This document shows, piece by piece, positions 25,276 to 35,600 of a stretch of DNA of 64,000 nucleotides. The DNA is taken from NCBI RefSeq assembly GCF_037042905.1, contig NC_087261.1, forward strand, positions 1,798,001-1,862,000. Direction: 5' to 3'. This DNA is from Lytechinus pictus (taxonomy: Eukaryota). Under the pieces are notes generated by a model. That model was not told the DNA's origin. It did no database searches and saw only the letters and a program-made list of their open reading frames with translations. The position numbers were made by a program, and so were the translations under genes. Position 1 is the first letter of the stretch. Each line of letters begins with the position of its first letter.

Positions 25276-27793
25276 CAAGTTATTTCACTGCTTAACAGCA
25301 CAGTCCAATTGGCAAAATATGTCAAACATAGAAGCATCCATGAGAATTTACTATTTTCTGCTTTATATGTTTACAAAAAATGATTGATGAAGCAATATAT
25401 ACAAAATCATCAAAGTTGCATAACCTATTTACAATATTGTTGGAAAGGCAATATAATGGACGGAATTTTAAAAATATGATGACTAACAGGATATCAAAAA
25501 ATTATGAATACTCTCATGTTAATCAAATTCGCCTGATGTCCTCTTTGGGGACAGTAAAATGGACGGAATGAATGGAATACATGTATAATGGTATTGATGA
25601 TTTCAGAGGTTTTAATGAACCTTTTTTGTGTACACCTTGGTGATTGTAAATGATTTTAAAGTTGTGGAATAAATTCAATTCAATTCAATTCAATTCAATG
25701 CAAATCAATTCAATACCAATTCAATTAAACTTAGGAATAATATCCTCATACATGTACATGTATCTGACTTTTAACATAATGATGTACATTTTTCCTACAT
25801 TAATACTTTCCATACAGTGTATATATACTTTTGAAGCACATCTAATATAAATTGTGACAGCATAAGACATATATGGTTAACTGGATTTAGATGAGGATTG
25901 ACGATGTACAGTGTACATAAAATATATAGCACAAGGCTTTTTACATGTAAATTCAAACTTGAATTTTACAAATTTCAGTCCCCATTTCATAGGCCTGTTC
26001 TAAACATTATACATATATACATCATCGTTTTCGATCCAAATTCATTCTGTTCTGCTATCAATGAACCTATATCAATTCTAAACTCATCACTGAATGATGT
26101 ACTGTATGAAGATTGACAATAAATTTAAAACAAATTTGCGATATATTCTGAAATATCATTTGCATATCAAAACAGTTGTGTTGCATAGTTAACATTTAGC
26201 TGCCCATGACATTATCATTATTCACAAATACAAAATAGCACAAACTGCAAATAAAACATGCACATGTATTATCTACCTAACATGTTAACGACATAGACCA
26301 GTTAATAAAATAAAGCTTGCAGTTTTACTTAAAAAACACAAATATTAAACTGTTAATTCCTTTTTTGTTAATTAAAATGATAAATCTTAAGCACAATTAG
26401 TATTGTTATTGATAAATTTGTTAATAGTATGAAATTTATGCCCAAACAAGTTATATCTTAAATTCTGATATATCTTCACTGTAATAATAAAAAAAAGATA
26501 TTCATATAATTATGATGTACATGTAAATGAAACAAAGGAGAACCTAAATATATATAGCTCTTCAATAGTCATTTATCAATACTCATGTTTACATGTACAT
26601 GTACATTATTTAATAAACTAATACACTGATAACACAGTAGGCCTAATCTAAATACATTCCGATGTATATGAAATACATTTTCTGTTATTACTTATTTAGT
26701 CTTTTCTCATTATCCAGCAAAAATGAGGAGTGATCTGTCATTTCACCTCTGAAAATACTTATTATAAAAAAAAAACAGCTTGAATTTGCAGTGCATATGG
26801 CAACTCACACAAAGAAGTCTTTAAATTTCTTGCCAGTTTAGACGGTCCATAGTCCATACCATATTTTTTTATTAATCACACATAAAAAACAAAAACAAAT
26901 AAAAACAATACTCAGTTGAAAACTTTCTCAACAGTCCTGCTCCTAATATATGTATATGCATATTTGTATGCCCTAACTATCAGGTACAATGTACAGCACA
27001 CTTTAATTTAAAACAAAGCACAACCCACTTAATTGCACAATTATCAACACATTCACTGAAATGATTCTCTTTTAATTGCATAAAACCAGATATTCTTTTA
27101 TGTATTCTGTGCACAAAAGTGTATCAAACAAACAAGTACAAAATCACCATTATATGAACTGTGTGCTTTACAATTATGACCAAAAATTGACAATGAGCTT
27201 ATATTTGTAATTTACATGTAATTGATTCAAACTAAAGTTTGCTTAGATAAAAAAAAGTTTTACATTATCCAATTCTTTATAAACAAGAATTCAGATAAAA
27301 TTGCATCACCTGCTGCTGCTGTGTAAAATCAATTGCCCTACCTCACAGCACATATAAAAAGTTATATCCTGACTCCTGAAATAATATGAAGTTAATGTCA
27401 CTGTACAAGTTCTACAGTGATCAGCTATTTCCAAAACACCAAACTTTATGCATTCTAAAAATTGAATCATTTGTTGAAGCATAAACCTCAAATCCATGCA
27501 CTTGTTCATAAAATTATTTAATTCCATAAACTCTAGACATAAAAAAGCTCTGTGGTGATTCTAAATTAAGTAGAAACTGATCAGAACTTTTTTTAAACTT
27601 GATTGTCCAAGCAATAAGCGATTATCTCGTGAACATTTCATGAATGGAATCCTATCCAAAAAGAAAAGTTGTTTTTTAAAGAATGGAAAATCAGAGAAAT
27701 AGATAGATGAAGTGTGAACAAAATTTTAAAAAAGGAGAGTTATGAACAAAGGTTGGTTTCCCCTTTAACAAGTCATGTAGTGTAATATATTTC

Positions 27794-28341
27794 TTACATT
27801 CTAAGATTTTGCAAGTGTTTTCTTACCCTTTCAAGTAAGAGATGAAAATTCTGCTTGTAGAGTTTCTCATTGCTGAAGTCCACTGGGCTCGTTCGGGCAA
27901 GAATCTTCTTCACTGCCGACATCCCACAATCAGGCGGCCATGGAACAAACCGTAGCATGACCGGAATGATCAGACGACGCAACGAGTCAGCCAGAATCAG
28001 ATCCTTCACGCAGTTATCCGACTGGAGGTACCGCGACGTGACGCAGGAGACGATGATCGCGGACGATCGCATGTTGCGGTGGATGTGGTCTTGCGCCGTC
28101 TCGTGGGCGGAGGCGGGGATCTGGGAACCAGAGGATTGCTGGCCGGACCCAACGGTGCGGTGGCTGCCCCCACTAGAGCCCCGAGTGTCTTGGGACATTG
28201 TCGGGATGGACTCCGCCCAGCAAGGGATGCCGTTGCTTTCTAAAAGTCTTTTAATGTCCTGAACCTTATTATGAGCATCCCATTGATATGATATGAACAC
28301 CCTTGGTTCAACTATGTTACTATTCCCACTCCAAGAAGCAT
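27794..28341 (-). CDS. Coding exon 4: TIR3 and stop
   Basis: catcag acceptor, ORF 27794-28390, VFISYQWD...SDNCVKDL...IIPV. Confidence 0.9.
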
Positions 28342-31300
28342 CTGATGTGGAAAAATAATAGATAAAAGAAAAATTGTTTACAATAAACATCCCTAATTAA
28401 AATCAATACGCATTTAACTCCCTAGAAAAGGGCTGAAAAGGACTACACATGATGCTATTGGCCTATATACACATGTCCTCTTCCTCTCTACCGATCCTTT
28501 ATTAATTTTTCAATCTCTCTTTTATTTCTTTCTTGTATGTACAGTGTATGATGATTAATACTGTTTCTTTATCAAAGGGTACTGGCTAAGTTTACTAGTT
28601 CTAGTGGCTACATGTAGTTCTAAATTCATATTTGTATCTGACCAAACCACAAACAGGTTAATTAGGTATCTTTAAACATTAGAAATGCCATGACTGATTC
28701 ATCACTGTTGCTAGTACATGTACATACTGAACAGTAGCACTTCAAACTACACCTTCTAATCAAGATAACAAGAGAACAATGCAATCAATTACAATATCTT
28801 ATAACAACTATTCAATAAATCAAAACAGTTTATCATATGTGAATACAAACACTTGAGTGATAACAAATATTTGTGACATTCATCAATACATCATTTGTTT
28901 TAACCTACAAAATGAGTTTTCCAGTCTCATTGCTTGGACTTTGGTGCACATCGTTTCATTGTAAAATGATAATCATGTTGATATTCACACCTAAATAACT
29001 GCTTATCAACAGCAGATGACGTTTGTTTAATAATGTTCTTGTAAGATTAAAAATAATTTGTACTATGAATGAAGACAACATGGATAAGAATGTAAATGAG
29101 AATGAGAGTCGTGCAAGTATTTTCATGGTATTTTTAACAGGGTTGAACTTAAATTTGGAAATTGGATATCGTTGCTGGGATGTTAAATCCTTGTATCTCA
29201 AAATAATAAAAGTTTGATGACAGCTCAGAATACATTGTATTTTAGAAATGTGGCAATCTCTTATTGTCAGAAAACAGTCTCTAAATAATCCTGTCATGAA
29301 ATTTTCTAGGCAAAAAAAAAGCTGTAATTTACAATTTTAATGGTGGCAACTTAATTAATATATTTTGTCTGATAATGCCTACAGAGAATATTTCTTGGGA
29401 AACATAGTTCCTTCTCATGTCAAAGGTGTCTAAAATCTAGCTTTCTCTGAGCTTTCCTAATATTTTGCTATTTTGGTAATTGACATACAAGGTATTAAAA
29501 CCCATTAAGTAGTAGGTTTCACGGTACACCAGGTATCTTTCTTGGAAAAATGTTGGTCCTTAAAGGATAATGAAACCCTTGAAACCAGCTGAATCCATAT
29601 CAAAGAGAAAAATCAAAGAAACATATTGTTGAAAGTTTGAGGAAGATTGAATGAATAATAAGAAAGTTATGAGCATTTGAATATTGAGATCACTAATGCC
29701 ATGTAGTTCCTCCTATTGGCAATGCGACCAAGATCTGTGATGTCACACACGTACAACTCCCTCATTACTTTAGTACTTATTTCACTTATATATCTCACTT
29801 TTATAGAGTCTATCACAAGGTAAAGTGTTCTCTTTATGAGAGGACAAGTACAGAGGTTTCACAACATTATATCATTGATGAATCGTTTGTCATATGATTA
29901 GAATGAGCAAAAAGAGATGTTTTGGGGTATATTTTCAGTGTCCAAAAGGGGAGAGTTGTTCATCTGTGACATCATAGATCTTGGTCGCATTGCCAATGGG
30001 AGGATCTCCATAGCATTAGTGATCTCGACATTCAAATGCTCATAACTCTTCTATTGCTAGTCCTATTTTACTCAAACTTTTGTTGATCTTATTCTTTGAT
30101 TTTTCTGCTTTCACAAAAGCTAACTTGCTCCAAGAGTTTCATTCTTCTTTAAAAGGACGAACATTTGCCCAAGAAAGATACATGATGTACCGTGAAACCT
30201 ACTACACTATTCTTGTTCTCCATGGAAACCTTCAGAAGTTAAAACCCCATATCAAGGAACAGGTTACTACAGATCACCTGCTCATACGGACCACTTTGTT
30301 TCCCTGGGATAGTCTTTATATACAAGTATGACTTGTAACTTACGAGATGTTGTCCCAAGGACTTGGAGAGGTTTCAGTCCATCCATCATACGGTTAAGAT
30401 AACTCTGTTCCAGGACCACACCTGGTACTCTCTTCAATGGCTTAATCTGATGTTCCAGGACATCCATAGCCTCAGTATACATCTTAGTCTCAAAGTCTAT
30501 AGCACTGCATTCTCCTGTAAAGTGAATGGTAAAGTCATCCATTAGGAATCAAGAGAACGCCCAAGATAATTCTGTTTTCCAGGGGGGGGGGAAATAAGAT
30601 GGGGGCTTGGGTGAATTTGCCCCTGAAACACCCTACAGACTACAGAGCTCTGGAAAACTAATAAAGAACCCTTGAAATCCCAGAGGTTTTAATAGAAACT
30701 TTAATACAATGCAACAAATCGGGCTGGTGAGAGAAAAAAGTAGCCACAGAAGAAAAAGTACTGATTTTTTTCCCCTGCAGTTTTCTTACTCTGACCTGGA
30801 TAAAGTTGGGTAGGCCTGGGAGGAAGTAAGTACTGCAGCTAATTTGTCAACCTTTTCTAAGCCAAAGCAGCCTCTCCAATTCTCGTCAAGGTGTTATATC
30901 CTTTATCTGTAATTGTTTTTTTTCTCTCTCTTCGATTCTTTTTTTAATGAATGCATATAACCATTTTCATTCTGTGTTTTGAATGCCAAATAAAATCAAT
31001 AACAATAATGATATACATACTGTACAAAAAATATCATGATGGAGCACTTACTGCAATTATAATTACACAAAAGGAACGAATGGAATACTACCAACCAAAT
31101 TCATGATTTTCATATTTCCATATGAATAAACAGAGTTCTTCTTTCAGGTATGAAATATTCAACAAATATTGTCATCCTGTATTATGTATGGTTTATTTAT
31201 AAATTTACATTTTAGTGTGCATGGTCATGGCAAGTCCCCCCACCCCCTCCAATCAAAGTGTCAGAAGATAACAATGTCAAGTATCAATTGGGCATTCCAT

Positions 31301-34300
31301 AGGTTGGTGGACATGAGTGTCTTTGTACATATAGCCCATCTGAACCGTAACGTGAGTAACCACTTTATCTGCACCCCTAGTAAAAACCATGTGTTCTTTA
31401 TTTTTTGAATTATATACAAATTTGTCTCCCTAATATACTTCTTTGAAATGGATATAATCAACTTTCATAAAAGCCTTGCATGAGGACACTTTTCACTTAT
31501 GTCCACTTTTCATTTTATGCATGTCCAAATCATGTAACATGAGTAACCGTCACATTTCAAAGATTTGCCAGGAGCATAATGAAATTTCCCAAGTTTTGTT
31601 TTTATACAAAGGATAATCAGACTTCGTACTATGTTGTGATAAAGAGATGTTTAGTTCCTTTCAATAATAATGGAGTTACAGCTCCAAGTATGAGTCAAGG
31701 TGTCTCCAAATGTAACGTGGGTAACCGTGGAATAGCCCAATTGCTGTTCATGCCTGCAACAGCCCTTATGACCAGCCACCCCAAAACCATCAAGATGCCA
31801 CCCAAAATGGTTTGAGTTTCATTGGACCGTATTCTGAACTCGGGTTTAAATCAAACCCTGGTTTAAAGTTGTGGTTTAACTATGGAGAGCCGATTGGGGC
31901 ACAAATCCCTAACAGTACACATTCAATTTAAACTCATATGACGTCCAAATTGTCAGGGAATGACAACTGAGGTATTTTAAAGTATTTTTCATCATTATGA
32001 AAGCAAAAGGAAACAAAATAGTGAACATAAGAAATATACAATATAAACAGAATGTTAGAATTTTTGGCTCCCCATAACTTTAGCACAGACTTAGACCATG
32101 GTCTAACTTAAAGCTGACTTCAGAATACGGGCCAATTGAGTTTAAAAGAGCATATCCTGAGCTGTACGATATCCTAAGCTTCTAATGATGTAAAACTTGT
32201 CAAAATTCCATCAACAATAAGCCACACACTTATTTGATTGAATGCAGAAGAATCAAAGCGAGACCTTCAAAAATAAAAAATAAAACATTTGAAGCCACTC
32301 CAGCATCCACATTGTGCAATCTCAGTGAAACTTCCAAGATGTCCAAAAAATGGTGTCAAAGAAACTCTTGTATCTTGCTTTCTATTCATCTTAAAATCTT
32401 GAAATTTTGACAGTACAGAGAAGAAGAACTACTCTTTCAGCTCATCTGTTTCAGTTTTTGCTTTATGAAGGCCAAGTTTACTATTTTGGCTATTTACAGA
32501 AAACCTTCCCTGGCGCCCATTGCAGAAAGAGTTGCAATCAATCGCAACTCTAAAAATCACGTGCAACTTGATTTTCAACCAATCAACAGCGCGCATTTGG
32601 GACTTGCGATTAATTTTTTTTACTTGCATTTAAACGCAACTCTTTCTACAACGGACCCCAGGCGACTTATTGTTTGTTTTGGGGTGGATGGTGACAGTTA
32701 ATATTCAAAGAAATGTTAACAAACCTAAGACTGCTTTGAGCGAAGGTCTGAGTTTCTCCCAGGAGTTCTTGAACATGGCCGTCACCAGGTTTTTACCGAG
32801 CCAGTCAGCAAAGAGGACTTCATGGAAGACAAACGGCGAGACACTGGAAGCATCCGTCATGATTACTAAGAGGTGTTTGGCTGCGGCTAGGCTGGGGCCA
32901 TTGATCTGGAGGAACTCGTCTCGTGAGCTTCCCAACTTCTCATGGCTCGTTACCTAAATTGGCATCGAGACAAAAGATTTTGCTGCTGTGACACGGGTTC
33001 ATTAGAAGAGCAAATTCACCACTACACAGTACACATAAATCCAATAGAGCTGAAATGTCCCTGACATGCAAAGATTTAAACTATCAGAGAATATATCATA
33101 AGATGATAAAGTGGATCCTATTCAAATGATTAGATGCCCAGGCACCTCACCAGGAATTTATTCAGAATAACACGTAAATTTCATTCATGACTAGTGATAA
33201 ACAGTCATTAAGCATTATGAGCAGTTATGGTTTTGATACGAGGATTATCTTTCAAATAACAAGGATCCATACTTCCATATAAGATCAATATAACAAACAT
33301 AATTTTACTAGGAATATGGCAAACCACATTATTGTCTGTATTTAAGTTGTTAATACAAATTTCAAGGGGGAAAAGTAAATTTTATCACAATATCAAAAAT
33401 ATTGTATGATTGGAAAAAAAATGATTTAAAATCAATCTATAGGGAAAACATAAGTAATTTCAGTTTGTTTAGCCTTTTGGTTTTTAGTACATTTTGGCAC
33501 TTCATCCATGTATACCAGCCATTTGTAAGTTGATTACTCTAAATTAAAGACTTCCAACCTCTTCCCTTAGGTTACCTTATCTTTTGACTTACTGTTAGGC
33601 CTTTTCTCTTGAGATCCTGCTTCAGATTATGGGCCAGCTTGACATCAGCTGGGTCATAGATGATATAGATGGTGTCTGTTTTGGGGCGTTGCGTCCGAGC
33701 CCTCAGGTGCCAGTTATCTGCCAGCTTGTGTTCCTTCTCCAGGATGGCCACTATGTGCTGTAGGATCTTCCTGCGAACCACCCTGCTATCCACCCCGAGT
33801 CGTTCCTGCATATCTTGATCCATGAGGGACATGAGCAGGAAACCGTCAATGTCCATCTCCGCAAAACTCTGACAGTAGAACTCCTTGATTCCGAGATCAT
33901 GGAGCCAGCTTTGGAGGTCATTCCTGCTCCACCGACAAAGCTTCTTGTCTTTGTATTCCTTGGTGAACTCTTCAGTGTTTATCACAGGAGCATAAGGAGC
34001 GTTGATGCTGATGTACGGCTCCAACTTGAGCATGAGAGAACCTATAACTCTTGATGCTCTTTCGGCGATACTGGTATTATTGTGATTCGATATGTTAACG
34101 AGATCACGCAACAAGGAATTGTATTGCTTCGGAATTTCCACACTCTCACAGAGTACTGCAAACACCTTAGGGGAATTGCTTGAGTTCTGCCTCTCCAGCA
34201 AGCAACGTAATTCATAGATAGACACCGGGCACTGAAAATAACATTCTGTTAAGAAACACACAGCAGCCCTGCACTTTTCAACAGCTTCCATGCGATGTGC

Positions 34301-34678
34301 GAACCAAGCCGGACTGTCCGTGTTGTGTTCATCCTTATCAAACCAAATATCCTCTTCAAGGTTATTTTCCTTGAATTGTCTTACAGCAGTGCACACAAAC
34401 AAGCGTTCTAGGAATCCTCCATCGGGCGAGTATGAGATGAAAATGCCCTTCTTGACTTTCTTGACTGAATTCTTTTGCTCTCCTTTACTCTTCTTTGGAC
34501 TCTTTTTGGCAACTTTATTTTCAACTGGGGCTCCATGATCACCACCGCTGTGAACATTAGATTGGTCCATCGTGACGTCTTTGCTTCCTGATCCGGTACA
34601 CTCCTCACCTTCAGCGCACCCTTCCTTGTTGGAAACAGGGGTATCGTCCACTTCCATTTTTTTCTCTTCTCCACTCAT
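27794..34678 (-). CDS. TIR-SAM-TIR-TIR domain protein, 677 aa; join complement(34678-33593,32953-32725,30514-30344,28341-27794)
   Basis: First in-frame ATG at 34678 after an in-frame TAA (34712-34714); canonical GT-AG sites with phases 0,1,1 reconcile. TIR box-1-like starts GIFISYS, TIYIIYD, RVFISYQW. SAM signature WSRNDLQSWLHDLGI...FAEMDIDGFLLMSL...LGV. Confidence 0.88.
29509..30241. mobile_element. Inverted pair of Penelope-type LTR fragments split by the TTAA element
   Basis: 29509-29559 and 30153-30241 are inverted copies of parts of 46610-46706. Confidence 0.7.
29564..30148. mobile_element. Kolobok-like TTAA element, copy of 4340-4923
   Basis: TTAA TSD at 29560-29563 and 30149-30152; near-identical to the VWA8-intron copy. 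Confidence 0.88.
30344..30514 (-). CDS. Coding exon 3: end of TIR2 and linker (ECSAIDFETKMY...)
   Basis: tttacag acceptor, C|gtaagt donor, ORF 30282-30542. Confidence 0.85.
31822..32135. mobile_element. MITE
   Basis: ttggaccgtattctgaa / ttcagaatacgggccaa TIRs. Confidence 0.7.
32509..32662. mobile_element. MITE
   Basis: cctggcgcccattgcagaaagagttgc / gcaactctttctacaacggaccccagg. Confidence 0.7.
32725..32953 (-). CDS. Coding exon 2: core of TIR2 (...SPFVFHEVLFADWLGKNLV...)
   Basis: aatttag acceptor, G|gtttgt donor, ORF 32705-32935. Confidence 0.87.
33593..34678 (-). CDS. Coding exon 1: low-complexity N-terminus, TIR1, SAM, start of TIR2
   Basis: ORF 33572-34711; donor ACA|gtaagt; acceptor ttttag| with exon start at 34776 (5' UTR part). 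Confidence 0.9.
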
Positions 34679-35240: not shown

Positions 35241-35600
35241 TACGGAGGCAGTGTAGCTCAGTCGGTTAGGGCGCCTGTTCCGGAAAAGATCGTAGATCTC
35301 AACGTGCGTGGGTTCGAGTCCCGCAGCATGCCGGAAGACGTCTAACAATAAAACTGATGCTAGCATTGTGTGTTAGCGTGCCTCACCGCTGTGTTCAGTG
35401 CGGGTGTGAATGCAGTTGGAAAACAAATGTTGGTCCCGTGTATAGGAGAGTCACAACCTATGCACGTTAAAACCAATACACTCTTCGTCAAAGAGTAGGG
35501 TGTTCACCCGGTGTATTGCACCTGCCGGTCCCCGGTACTACAATACTGCAAGAATCTTCAGGATTGAAGGAGGCAGTGTAGCTTGAAGAAGAAGAAGAAG
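35241..35600 (+). mobile_element. tRNA-derived SINE (long-variable-arm, Leu/Ser-like head) with (GAA)n tail
   Basis: tagctcagtcgg A-box, gggttcgagtccc B-box, (gaa)n tail, candidate TSD aataataa. Confidence 0.75.

What the first reader, a model, noticed from the sequence alone, without database searches (positions are those of the whole stretch)
27794..34678. TIR-SAM-TIR-TIR protein: candidate non-canonical innate-immune enzyme or adaptor
Seen: a 677-aa protein with no evident signal peptide, TM segment, LRR, ARM or death domain. It carries three TIR-like domains (GIFISYS...IWFD...CPVSIYEL; TIYIIYD...SPFVFHEV; RVFISYQW...IPCW...SDNCVKDL...IIPV) and one SAM between TIR1 and TIR2. Established: SARM1 is ARM-SAM-SAM-TIR, SAM oligomerisation activates its TIR NADase, and a Glu in helix C is catalytic in SARM1, plant and bacterial TIRs. 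The motifs here look more like the TIR_2 type than TLR/MyD88 TIRs. Inference: a SARM1-analogous but differently wired, self-assembling NAD-consuming or nucleotide-messenger-producing protein of invertebrate immunity. I do not recognise a characterised protein with this architecture.
Basis: partly seen in the sequence, partly recalled or inferred. Interest (0 to 1): 0.85.

Follow-up and report, generated by a model that had tools for sequence, protein, structure and literature searches.

The report
Conserved TIR-SAM-TIR-TIR protein, SARM1-related
This is a real, expressed sea-urchin gene for a soluble protein with three TIR domains and one SARM1-type SAM domain. It belongs to an ancient, nearly single-copy animal family that nobody has characterised and that is a good candidate for a second SARM1-like NAD-processing enzyme.

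Summary
Observation confirmed. A four-exon, minus-strand gene (34678-27794, all GT-AG) encodes exactly 677 aa. RNA-seq contigs and stranded reads join all three junctions as predicted.

- **Domains:** all three TIR-like regions fold as TIR domains, and the SAM domain is real. There is no TM segment, signal peptide, ARM, LRR or death domain.
- **Not an orphan:** the protein is 97.6% identical to Lytechinus variegatus LOC121430660. It has collinear orthologs at 38-65% identity in echinoderms, hemichordates, amphioxus ("Bf-TIR-SAM-like"), a tunicate, bichir, lungfish, molluscs, annelids, a brachiopod, a nemertean, a bryozoan and Nematostella, essentially one per species.
- **SARM1 link:** the SAM domain is specifically SARM1-SAM1-like (E 2.8e-15). 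SARM1 TIR is the top structural match of TIR3 and among the top matches of TIR2. TIR1 is nearest to MyD88/IL-1RAcP-type TIRs.
- **Active-site position:** the catalytic-Glu position on helix C is Glu in TIR1 (42/43), Glu in TIR2 (42/43) and an invariant Asp in TIR3 (43/43).

Interpretation partly supported. A differently wired SARM1 relative that oligomerises through its SAM domain is the best reading (about 0.5). Enzymatic activity is untested, and an immune role has no support. No functional study was found. The same scan had already noted the Glu/Glu/Asp pattern on this stretch.

The parts
33593..34678 (-). Exon 1 (aa 1-362): start codon, disordered Lys-rich N-terminus (aa 1-74), TIR1, SAM, first strand and helix of TIR2
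   Evidence: ORF and splice donor GTAAGT; joint 32953<33593 seen in RNA contigs and reads; Pfam TIR_2 and SAM_2
34010..34456 (-). TIR1 domain (aa 75-223); Glu156 codon at 34211-34213
   Evidence: Pfam TIR_2 34.7 bits; profile hits MyD88 E 7.5e-5, TLR2, RUN1; structural match to IL-1RAcPb TIR Z 14.7; E156 conserved 42/43
33725..33943 (-). SAM domain (aa 246-318), SARM1-SAM1-like
   Evidence: Pfam SAM_2 E 5e-8; profile against PDB: SARM1 SAM1 E 2.8e-15, next liprin 2e-10; Foldseek match to SARM1 tandem SAM, rmsd 1.3 A, 30% identity; 74% mean column identity
30435..33691 (-). TIR2 domain (aa 330-465), encoded across exons 1-3 with introns 1 and 2 inside; Glu407 codon at 32819-32821
   Evidence: TIR_2 24.8 bits, below threshold; domain model pLDDT 88.7; best PDB matches are all TIR domains, including SARM1 and TIR-1; E407 conserved 42/43; most conserved region of the protein, 74% column identity
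32725..32953 (-). Exon 2 (aa 363-439, ends in phase 1)
   Evidence: AG acceptor and GT donor; both joints seen in RNA
30344..30514 (-). Exon 3 (aa 439-496): end of TIR2 plus a conserved helical linker
   Evidence: Splice sites; joints in RNA; linker helices 475-483 and 488-494 in the model
27794..28341 (-). Exon 4 (aa 496-677 plus stop): TIR3
   Evidence: Acceptor CAG; joint 28341>30344 in RNA; Pfam TIR_2 47.7 bits
27797..28309 (-). TIR3 domain (aa 507-677); invariant Asp609 codon at 28001-28003
   Evidence: Structural match to SARM1 TIR Z 16.9, rmsd 2.2 A over 126 residues; HMM alignment puts D609 on SARM1 E642 and on the Glu of the Cat1 WCWDEL motif; D609 conserved 43/43
28097..28204 (-). 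Disordered Ser/Gly-rich insert in the BB-loop position of TIR3 (aa 542-577). It holds a conserved R-G-x-S-S-x-S-x-R-S motif (R549, S552, S555 and R557 conserved in at least 90%)
   Evidence: pLDDT below 50; conservation

Best explanation
The gene encodes a cytosolic, SARM1-related multi-TIR protein of an ancient animal family that predates the cnidarian-bilaterian split.

Proposed mechanism (inferred, not shown):
- The single SARM1-SAM1-type SAM domain drives homo-oligomerisation.
- Oligomerisation brings the TIR domains into the head-to-tail contacts that TIR enzymes need.
- TIR2, and probably TIR1, each keep the helix-C Glu. They would cleave or cyclise NAD(P)+ or a related nucleotide, either to deplete it or to make a small-molecule signal.
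- TIR3 is the most SARM1-like in fold but has an invariant Asp in place of the Glu. It also has a conserved Ser/Arg motif in a disordered BB-loop insert. It would act as a regulatory or partner TIR that completes or gates the active assembly.
- The MyD88/IL-1RAcP-like TIR1 and the disordered basic N-terminus would stand in for the ARM domain of SARM1 as the input or autoinhibitory end.

Shown: gene structure, expression, folds, conservation and residue identities. Inferred: oligomerisation, catalysis, and the division of labour among the three TIRs.
For: - Gene and transcript are real.
- Three TIR folds plus a SAM domain appear in a confident model (pLDDT 82.9, pTM 0.67).
- TIR3 matches SARM1 TIR at Z 16.9. 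TIR2 alone matches TIR-1/SARM1 best by Foldseek and SARM1 at Z 14.3 by VIA. The SAM+TIR2 unit aligns to the SAM-TIR part of SARM1 and TIR-1 at Z about 14.
- The SAM profile is far closer to SARM1 SAM1 than to any other solved SAM domain (E 2.8e-15 against 2e-10).
- At the sixth residue of helix C, TIR1 has E156 (42/43), TIR2 has E407 (42/43) and TIR3 has D609 (43/43). D609 aligns with SARM1 E642 and with the Glu of the Cat1 WCWDEL motif. E407 aligns with D609 (hhalign E 1.4e-4). MyD88, a pure scaffold, has Gln where TIR1 keeps Glu.
- Purifying selection is strong. There is 50-65% identity between phyla and 38% to Nematostella, and the proteins are collinear over about 600 aa. There are zero changes in SAM and one in TIR2 against L. 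variegatus.
- Precedent: two TIRs in one chain form a composite pocket in the Drosophila enzyme Raw (PMC13455253).
Against: - No activity data exist for any member.
- A Glu at this position is necessary but not sufficient. From my own knowledge, TLR TIR domains carry a similar WCxxE motif and have not been shown to be NADases.
- The Trp that stacks on nicotinamide in SARM1 (four residues before the Glu) is Val in TIR1, Phe in TIR2 and Asn in TIR3 (read).
- TIR2 is below the Pfam threshold, and its profile finds no solved TIR by sequence.
- The nearest relatives of TIR1 are scaffold TIRs.
- SARM1 uses two SAM domains to build its octamer. One SAM domain may behave differently.
- I had no coordinates or PAE, so the contacts between domains are not established.
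Confidence: 0.5

Rival explanations
1. A non-enzymatic TIR scaffold or adaptor, or a negative regulator. The three TIRs and the SAM domain nucleate or cap TIR signalosomes (TLR/IL-1R-MyD88-type) purely through protein-protein contacts, as MyD88, MAL and TRAM do. The conserved acidic residues would be structural.
For: The TIR1 profile is closest to MyD88 (E 7.5e-5), TLR2 and IL-1RAcP. TIR3 has Asp instead of the catalytic Glu in all 43 orthologs. The SARM1 Trp position is not kept in TIR1 or TIR3. Amphioxus TIR adaptors, including SARM, have been reported to regulate MyD88 and TICAM pathways by binding (PMC6043800).
Against: Glu is kept at the catalytic position in two TIRs in 42 of 43 species from cnidarians to chordates, whereas the scaffold MyD88 has Gln there. 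TIR2 and TIR3 match SARM1 and other enzymatic TIRs (SPARTA, plant TIRs) closely in structure, alongside receptor-type TIRs such as Hydra TRR-2 and IL-1RAcPb. The family is present in species names across phyla as a single copy, unlike the expanded adaptor sets of urchins, amphioxus and bivalves.
Confidence: 0.3
2. A partner or modulator of SARM1 itself. Its SARM1-SAM1-like SAM domain co-assembles with the SARM1 SAM ring, and its TIRs tune the TIR assembly of SARM1, either activating or poisoning it. It would not act as an autonomous enzyme.
For: The SAM domain is specifically SARM1-SAM1-like (E 2.8e-15; 30% identity and rmsd 1.3 A to SARM1 SAM). TIR3 is SARM1-like in fold, keeps equivalents of Y568 and D594, but has Asp at the E642 position, as might be expected of a pseudo-enzyme partner.
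Against: No co-occurrence or interaction data. TIR1 and TIR2 keep Glu, which a pure modulator would not need. Whether the family's losses track any change in SARM1 was not examined.
Confidence: 0.12
3. A mis-joined or non-functional gene model, with the exons belonging to separate genes or to a pseudogene.
For: None found. TIR2 is split over three exons and scores below the Pfam threshold.
Against: Single RNA contigs of 4.0 and 4.4 kb and spliced stranded reads span all four exons. The frame is open, with canonical splice sites. A gap-free 677-aa ortholog exists at 97.6% identity, and collinear orthologs exist in more than 40 species.
Confidence: 0.01

Closest known systems
SARM1 / C. elegans TIR-1 / Drosophila dSarm (ARM-SAM-SAM-TIR NAD+ hydrolase)
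   Same: The SAM domain is specifically SARM1-SAM1-like. SARM1 TIR is the top structural match of TIR3 and among the top matches of TIR2. SAM is directly followed by a TIR that carries the helix-C Glu. The protein is cytosolic and conserved across animals.
   Different: No ARM autoinhibitory domain, with a TIR (TIR1) in its place. One SAM domain rather than two. Three TIRs rather than one. The C-terminal TIR has Asp at the E642 position. The phyletic pattern differs: no arthropod, nematode, teleost or tetrapod names appear among the hits, although SARM1 exists in those groups. No sequence-level TIR match to SARM1 beyond E about 0.01.
Amphioxus 'Bf-TIR-SAM' hybrid gene (Zhang et al. 2008, PMC2575513) and its RefSeq and UniProt orthologs ('Bf-TIR-SAM-like protein', 'uncharacterized protein')
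   Same: The hit list shows the same family: a Branchiostoma ortholog at 50% identity over 668 aa, and sea-slug orthologs that sources name 'Bf-TIR-SAM-like'. The 2008 paper reports a cloned cDNA with the TIR-SAM combination.
   Different: The paper gives only the domain combination and evidence of transcription. It reports no three-TIR description, no function and no active-site analysis. I could not verify that model Brafl1_131196 is the exact ortholog.
Drosophila Raw (DD-TIR-DD-TIR, cADPR-specific hydrolase; PMC13455253)
   Same: An animal protein with several TIR folds in one chain, in which two TIRs are proposed to build one catalytic pocket with essential Glu residues. It is a precedent for division of labour between TIRs in a single polypeptide.
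   Different: Raw has death-like domains and no SAM domain, and its authors describe it as a distinct TIR family. No homology to Raw was tested or seen here.
Scaffold TIRs of the TLR/IL-1R pathway (MyD88, TLR2, IL-1RAcP)
   Same: The TIR1 profile hits MyD88 (E 7.5e-5) and TLR2. The best structural match of TIR1 is IL-1RAcPb TIR.
   Different: No death domain, LRR, Ig or TM segment. TIR1 keeps Glu where MyD88 has Gln. Pfam scores TIR_2 above TIR for all three domains.
Prokaryotic enzymatic TIRs (SPARTA TIR-APAZ, Thoeris ThsB, CRISPR-associated Cat1)
   Same: TIR3 and TIR2 match these in structure at Z 13-16.6. The TIR3 helix-C motif aligns with the Cat1 'SDWCWDEL'. All three TIRs are of the Pfam TIR_2 type.
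   Different: No sensor or effector partner domains of defence systems. PADLOC models give no significant hit. This is a eukaryotic, intron-containing gene inherited vertically.

Membership tests
TIR domain superfamily (three copies) | Flavodoxin-like five-strand beta-alpha fold that matches solved TIR domains | tested here: met
   TIR3 Z 16.9 to SARM1 TIR and TIR1 Z 14.7 to IL-1RAcPb TIR. For TIR2 alone, the top 12 hits of an unbiased PDB scan are all TIR domains, Z 15.2-12.5.
TIR domain superfamily (three copies) | Pfam TIR_2/TIR score above the gathering threshold for each copy | tested here: inconclusive
   TIR1 34.7 bits and TIR3 47.7 bits against a cut-off of 28. TIR2 reaches only 24.8 bits, E 3.3e-5.
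SAM domain | Pfam SAM_1/SAM_2 above threshold and a five-helix fold | tested here: met
   SAM_2 33.3 bits and SAM_1 29 bits. rmsd 1.3 A to SARM1 SAM.
SARM1 / TIR-1 / dSarm orthologs | N-terminal ARM/HEAT autoinhibitory domain that binds NAD+/NMN | tested here: not met
   No ARM hit in Pfam. The region before the SAM domain is a disordered tail plus TIR1.
SARM1 / TIR-1 / dSarm orthologs | Tandem SAM1-SAM2 that forms the octameric ring | tested here: not met
   Only one SAM domain (aa 246-318). It aligns to SAM1 strongly and to SAM2 only weakly.
SARM1 / TIR-1 / dSarm orthologs | Single C-terminal TIR with the catalytic Glu (E642) | tested here: not met
   The C-terminal TIR3 has an invariant Asp at the aligned position. 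The Glu is present in TIR1 and TIR2 instead.
Enzymatic (NAD-cleaving) TIR domains | Conserved Glu on helix C at the position of SARM1 E642 | tested here: met
   E156 in TIR1 and E407 in TIR2, each 42/43. The register is supported. TIR3 has Asp.
Enzymatic (NAD-cleaving) TIR domains | Measured NAD(P)+ or nucleotide turnover that depends on that Glu | not testable with these tools
   Needs biochemistry. No published assay was found.
Conserved metazoan TIR-SAM-TIR-TIR orthogroup ('Bf-TIR-SAM-like') | Full-length collinear homology with the same domain order | tested here: met
   97.6% identity over 677/677 aa to the L. variegatus protein. Single BLAST HSPs cover about 600 aa to orthologs in more than 40 species, including Nematostella.
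ecTIR-DC families of Gerdol et al. 2017 | Assignment to one of the numbered families by architecture | not testable with these tools
   The paper is not held. The citing papers do not describe a SAM-containing family.

The most novel reading that the evidence does not exclude
This is a second ancient family of enzymatically active animal TIR proteins, alongside SARM1 (and the recently reported Raw). Three non-equivalent TIRs in one chain would divide the work. TIR1 and TIR2, with Glu, would make or destroy a nucleotide signal. The SARM1-like TIR3, with its invariant Asp and a conserved, probably phosphorylated BB-loop motif, would gate assembly or process the product. The whole would be switched on by polymerisation through the SARM1-type SAM domain. 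The system would date from before the cnidarian-bilaterian split and would have been lost in ecdysozoans and in most vertebrates.
Probability: 0.3. Interest if true: 0.8.

Novelty: new variant of a known kind. Interest (0 to 1): 0.55.

Why it matters
[quoted passage not shown] This family has four notable features:
- It is deeply conserved and nearly single-copy.
- It has a SARM1-type SAM domain.
- Two of its TIRs keep the catalytic Glu.
- One TIR has an invariant Glu-to-Asp change.

It occurs in tractable models (Lytechinus, Nematostella, amphioxus, Aplysia). It therefore offers a direct test of two questions: whether NAD-derived TIR signalling in animals is broader than SARM1, and how several TIRs in one chain cooperate. 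If the protein turns out to be a scaffold, it would instead be a conserved non-canonical adaptor that tetrapods lost. For genome annotation, the gene should not be labelled SARM1 or 'ADP-ribosyl cyclase', as some automatic names do.

Tried and rejected
- **Single-sequence PDB searches** with each TIR found nothing meaningful. Profiles were needed, and even the TIR2 profile found no solved TIR by sequence.
- **PADLOC** defence models gave no significant hit.
- **Protein Atlas** returned only the family's own cluster, dSarm fragments and generic TIR_2 clusters.
- **Whole-protein Foldseek** gave SARM1 with a meaningless global superposition (TM 0.1-0.2, rmsd above 20 A). Reading the result domain by domain was required.
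- **Internal duplication:** hhalign between the three TIRs gave only TIR3-TIR2 at E 1.4e-4. TIR1 against the others was not significant, so a recent internal duplication is rejected.
- **Literature:** Gerdol et al. 2017 is not held. The terms 'ecTIR-DC', 'TIR-SAM', 'three TIR domains' and 'bbtTIRA' gave no functional study of this family. I could not establish whether amphioxus bbtTIRA or bbtTIRC belong to it.
- **Full-length window protein:** it could not be submitted by reference because it is spliced. I used its exon pieces and the 97.6% identical P0152 as a proxy for the fold and profile work.
- **Rejected readings:** SARM1 ortholog (the ARM, tandem-SAM and C-terminal-Glu tests fail), recent bacterial transfer (introns, vertical distribution), and a false gene model (RNA evidence).


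Full report
**1.
The minus strand between 34678 and 27794 carries four coding exons: 34678-33593, 32953-32725, 30514-30344 and 28341-27794. All have canonical GT..AG borders. Joined, they give 2034 nt, that is 677 codons plus a stop. The ATG at 34678 is the first one after an in-frame TAA.

I laid two RNA-run contig sets and two stranded raw-read RNA runs on 28000-33900. They show precisely the three predicted joints: 28341>30344, 30513/4>32724/5, and 32949>33589 with a 4-base ambiguity. Single assembled transcripts of 4.0 and 4.4 kb cross all exons. Read orientation is uniform and consistent with a minus-strand RNA. Read depth inside the introns comes only from high-copy repeats.

**2. The domains are real.**
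On the window's own exon translations, Pfam gives:
- TIR_2 for aa 79-199 (34.7 bits);
- SAM_2 and SAM_1 for aa 250-309;
- TIR_2 for exon 4 (47.7 bits).

The middle TIR is split over three exons, so I tested it on a near-identical ortholog (below). It reaches only 24.8 bits against the 28-bit threshold (E 3.3e-5).

AlphaFold2 with a 43-ortholog alignment gives a confident model (pLDDT 82.9, pTM 0.67). It contains three complete beta-alpha-beta TIR-like units and a five-helix SAM domain. The disordered stretches are 1-71, 496-506 and 542-575.

Structural matches, domain by domain:
- **TIR3 (507-671):** human SARM1 TIR at Z 16.9 and rmsd 2.2 A, then SPARTA, Hydra TRR-2 and plant TIRs.
- **TIR1 (75-223):** IL-1RAcPb TIR at Z 14.7.
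- **SAM+TIR2 (237-464):** aligns to the SAM-TIR part of SARM1 and TIR-1 at Z about 14.
- **TIR2 folded alone (pLDDT 88.7):** matches TIR-1 and SARM1 best by Foldseek. In an unbiased scan of 48,161 PDB representatives, its top twelve hits are all TIR domains (Z 15.2-12.5).

No other Pfam domain is present. There is no hydrophobic segment (highest 19-residue hydropathy 1.47).

**3. What organism and what family.**
An exhaustive HMMER scan with exon 1 found 46 cluster representatives at E below 1e-30. A word-indexed search with the best of these returned named orthologs.

The window protein is 97.6% identical, 677 of 677 residues without a gap, to Lytechinus variegatus LOC121430660, an 'uncharacterized protein'. 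The window therefore comes from a very close Lytechinus relative, a sea urchin.

Collinear, full-length orthologs exist as follows:
- other echinoids (77-81% identity);
- starfish, brittle stars, crinoids and a sea cucumber (about 59-65%);
- three hemichordates;
- Branchiostoma (50%);
- Styela (45%);
- the bichir Erpetoichthys (44%) and the lungfish Protopterus;
- many molluscs, plus Lingula, Owenia, Capitella, Lamellibrachia, Tubulanus and Watersipora (50-57%);
- Nematostella vectensis (38% over residues 47-671).

Nearly every species name appears once. No arthropod, nematode, teleost or tetrapod name is among the 120 best hits. That is an observation on this hit list, not a proof of loss.

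Two sea-slug entries are named 'Bf-TIR-SAM-like protein'. The name goes back to amphioxus, where Zhang et al. 2008 listed TIR-SAM among novel hybrid genes and recovered a cDNA for it (PMC2575513). Automatic UniRef names such as 'NAD(+) hydrolase SARM1' or 'ADP-ribosyl cyclase' are transferred labels. I found no functional study. The Gerdol et al. 2017 survey, which probably classifies this family, is not in the library.

**4. Relationship to SARM1.**
A profile of the SAM domain hits SARM1 SAM1 at E 2.8e-15 and C. elegans TIR-1 at 1e-12. The next family, liprin, is at 2e-10, and Shank is at 1e-5. This is a specific kinship, not generic SAM similarity.

The TIR3 profile finds Cat1 and SARM1 TIR weakly by sequence (E 0.004-0.02). 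SARM1 is the top structural match of TIR3 and among the top matches of TIR2.

The defining SARM1 features are nevertheless absent. There is no ARM domain, there is one SAM domain rather than two, and the C-terminal TIR lacks the Glu. This is a SARM1 relative with different wiring, not a SARM1 ortholog.

The profile of TIR1 is closest to MyD88, TLR2, RUN1 and IL-1RAcP.

The three TIRs are very divergent from each other. Only TIR3-TIR2 is detectable by hhalign, at E 1.4e-4. All three are already present in Nematostella, so the triplication is older than the cnidarian-bilaterian split.

**5. Active-site reading.**
In all three domains the candidate catalytic residue is the sixth residue of helix C.

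| Domain | Residue | Conservation across 43 orthologs |
|---|---|---|
| TIR1 | E156 | Glu in 42 |
| TIR2 | E407 | Glu in 42 (Gln in the bichir) |
| TIR3 | D609 | Asp in all 43 |

The register is supported in four ways:
- The HMM alignment puts D609 on SARM1 E642 (CLKDL against VHKEI).
- It also puts D609 on the Glu of the Cat1 WCWDEL motif.
- hhalign puts E407 on D609.
- The MyD88 alignment puts E156 on a Gln.

TIR3 also keeps equivalents of SARM1 Y568 (Y514) and D594 (D539). Four residues before the acidic residue, where SARM1 has Trp, TIR1 has Val, TIR2 has Phe and TIR3 has Asn.

TIR3 carries a disordered Ser/Gly-rich insert at the BB-loop position. Within it sits a conserved R-G-x-S-S-x-S-x-R-S core, with R549, S552, S555 and R557 conserved in at least 90% of orthologs. 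This looks like a regulatory, possibly phosphorylated, element in the loop that controls TIR-TIR assembly in other TIR proteins. That reading is an inference.

The same scan had independently noted the Glu/Glu/Asp pattern on this stretch. I verified it here.

**6. Selection.**
Mean column identity across phyla is:
- 74% for SAM;
- 74% for TIR2 plus its linker;
- 56% for TIR1;
- 44% for TIR3, whose variable loop lowers the figure.

Against L. variegatus there are 16 differences. Six lie in the disordered N-terminus, none in SAM, one in TIR2, and none in the structured parts of TIR3. Single-copy status and this degree of conservation resemble a core signalling enzyme such as SARM1. They do not resemble the expanded, fast-evolving immune TIR repertoires of urchins, amphioxus or bivalves. 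Nothing in the data ties the gene to immunity.

**7. Most likely mechanism.**
I commit to a SARM1-related multi-TIR nucleotide-processing protein that oligomerises through its SAM domain (confidence about 0.5). Its proposed parts are:
- the SAM domain brings chains together;
- TIR2 (Glu plus Phe, the most conserved domain) and probably TIR1 supply catalytic pockets;
- TIR3 (Asp, regulated BB loop) acts as a partner or gating TIR.

Two TIRs in one chain forming one pocket has a precedent in Drosophila Raw (PMC13455253). A distant AFDB homolog with 23% identity superposes over the whole length at TM 0.58. Together with pTM 0.67, this suggests a defined arrangement of the domains. I had no coordinates to inspect it.

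The main rival is a pure scaffold, adaptor or negative regulator (about 0.3). A modulator of SARM1 acting through SAM co-assembly is possible (about 0.12). An artefactual gene model is excluded.

Caveat from my own knowledge: a Glu at this position is necessary but not sufficient for NADase activity.

**8. Novelty and score.**
The architecture is already catalogued in databases and has been mentioned once in the literature, but it is functionally unstudied. It is a new variant of a known kind: a SARM1-type SAM-TIR protein with three TIRs and no ARM domain. Interest is moderate to high for TIR and NAD-signalling specialists.

Noticed in passing
window 29509-30205 (intron 3 of the gene): A very high-copy repeat at 29560-30152 is transcribed from both strands (depth hundreds of times that of the gene) and has sharp boundaries. 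It has internal 161-nt inverted arms (29606-29766 / 29946-30106, 80% complementary). It is flanked by a second pair of 53-nt inverted arms (29509-29561 / 30153-30205, 91%), as if one foldback element had inserted into another.
   Followed up: partly
window 31330-32690 (intron 2): Further repeats are expressed from both strands, with many variant letters, small indels, chimeric joints and loose ends. They are probably dispersed transposon copies rather than part of the gene's transcript.
   Followed up: no
window 48568-50340, + strand: Three consecutive ORFs (134, 114 and 379 aa) look by eye like a frame-shifted reverse transcriptase of a non-LTR retrotransposon. No family search was run on them. 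A related fragment lies at 55143-55478 on the minus strand.
   Followed up: no
window about 35270-35370, minus strand, 0.6 kb upstream of the start codon: A stretch that reads like part of a tRNA (...GGGACTCGAACCC...). ARAGORN finds no tRNA gene anywhere in the window, so it is probably a tRNA-derived SINE remnant near the promoter region.
   Followed up: partly
window about 25900-27793: The RNA contigs extend about 2.1 kb beyond position 28000 on the 3' side. This implies a 3' UTR of roughly 1.9 kb, if it is unspliced.
   Followed up: no
window 28019, 28184, 28202, 28314, 28334/28337, 30396, 33596, 33713, 33778: Exonic single-base differences between the assembly and the raw RNA reads of two runs. 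Some are fixed (28184 A>C in all reads) and others are at about 50%. They are most simply allelic polymorphism between individuals. No DNA run of the same animals was checked, so RNA editing is not excluded.
   Followed up: no
window 60090-60650: A run of 564 N (assembly gap or masked stretch).
   Followed up: no
P0253 (hit): A Batillaria attramentaria database protein fuses radical-SAM/MiaB-type Pfam domains (PF04055, PF00919) to a TIR_2 part of this family. This is probably a gene-model fusion of neighbouring genes rather than a real architecture.
   Followed up: no
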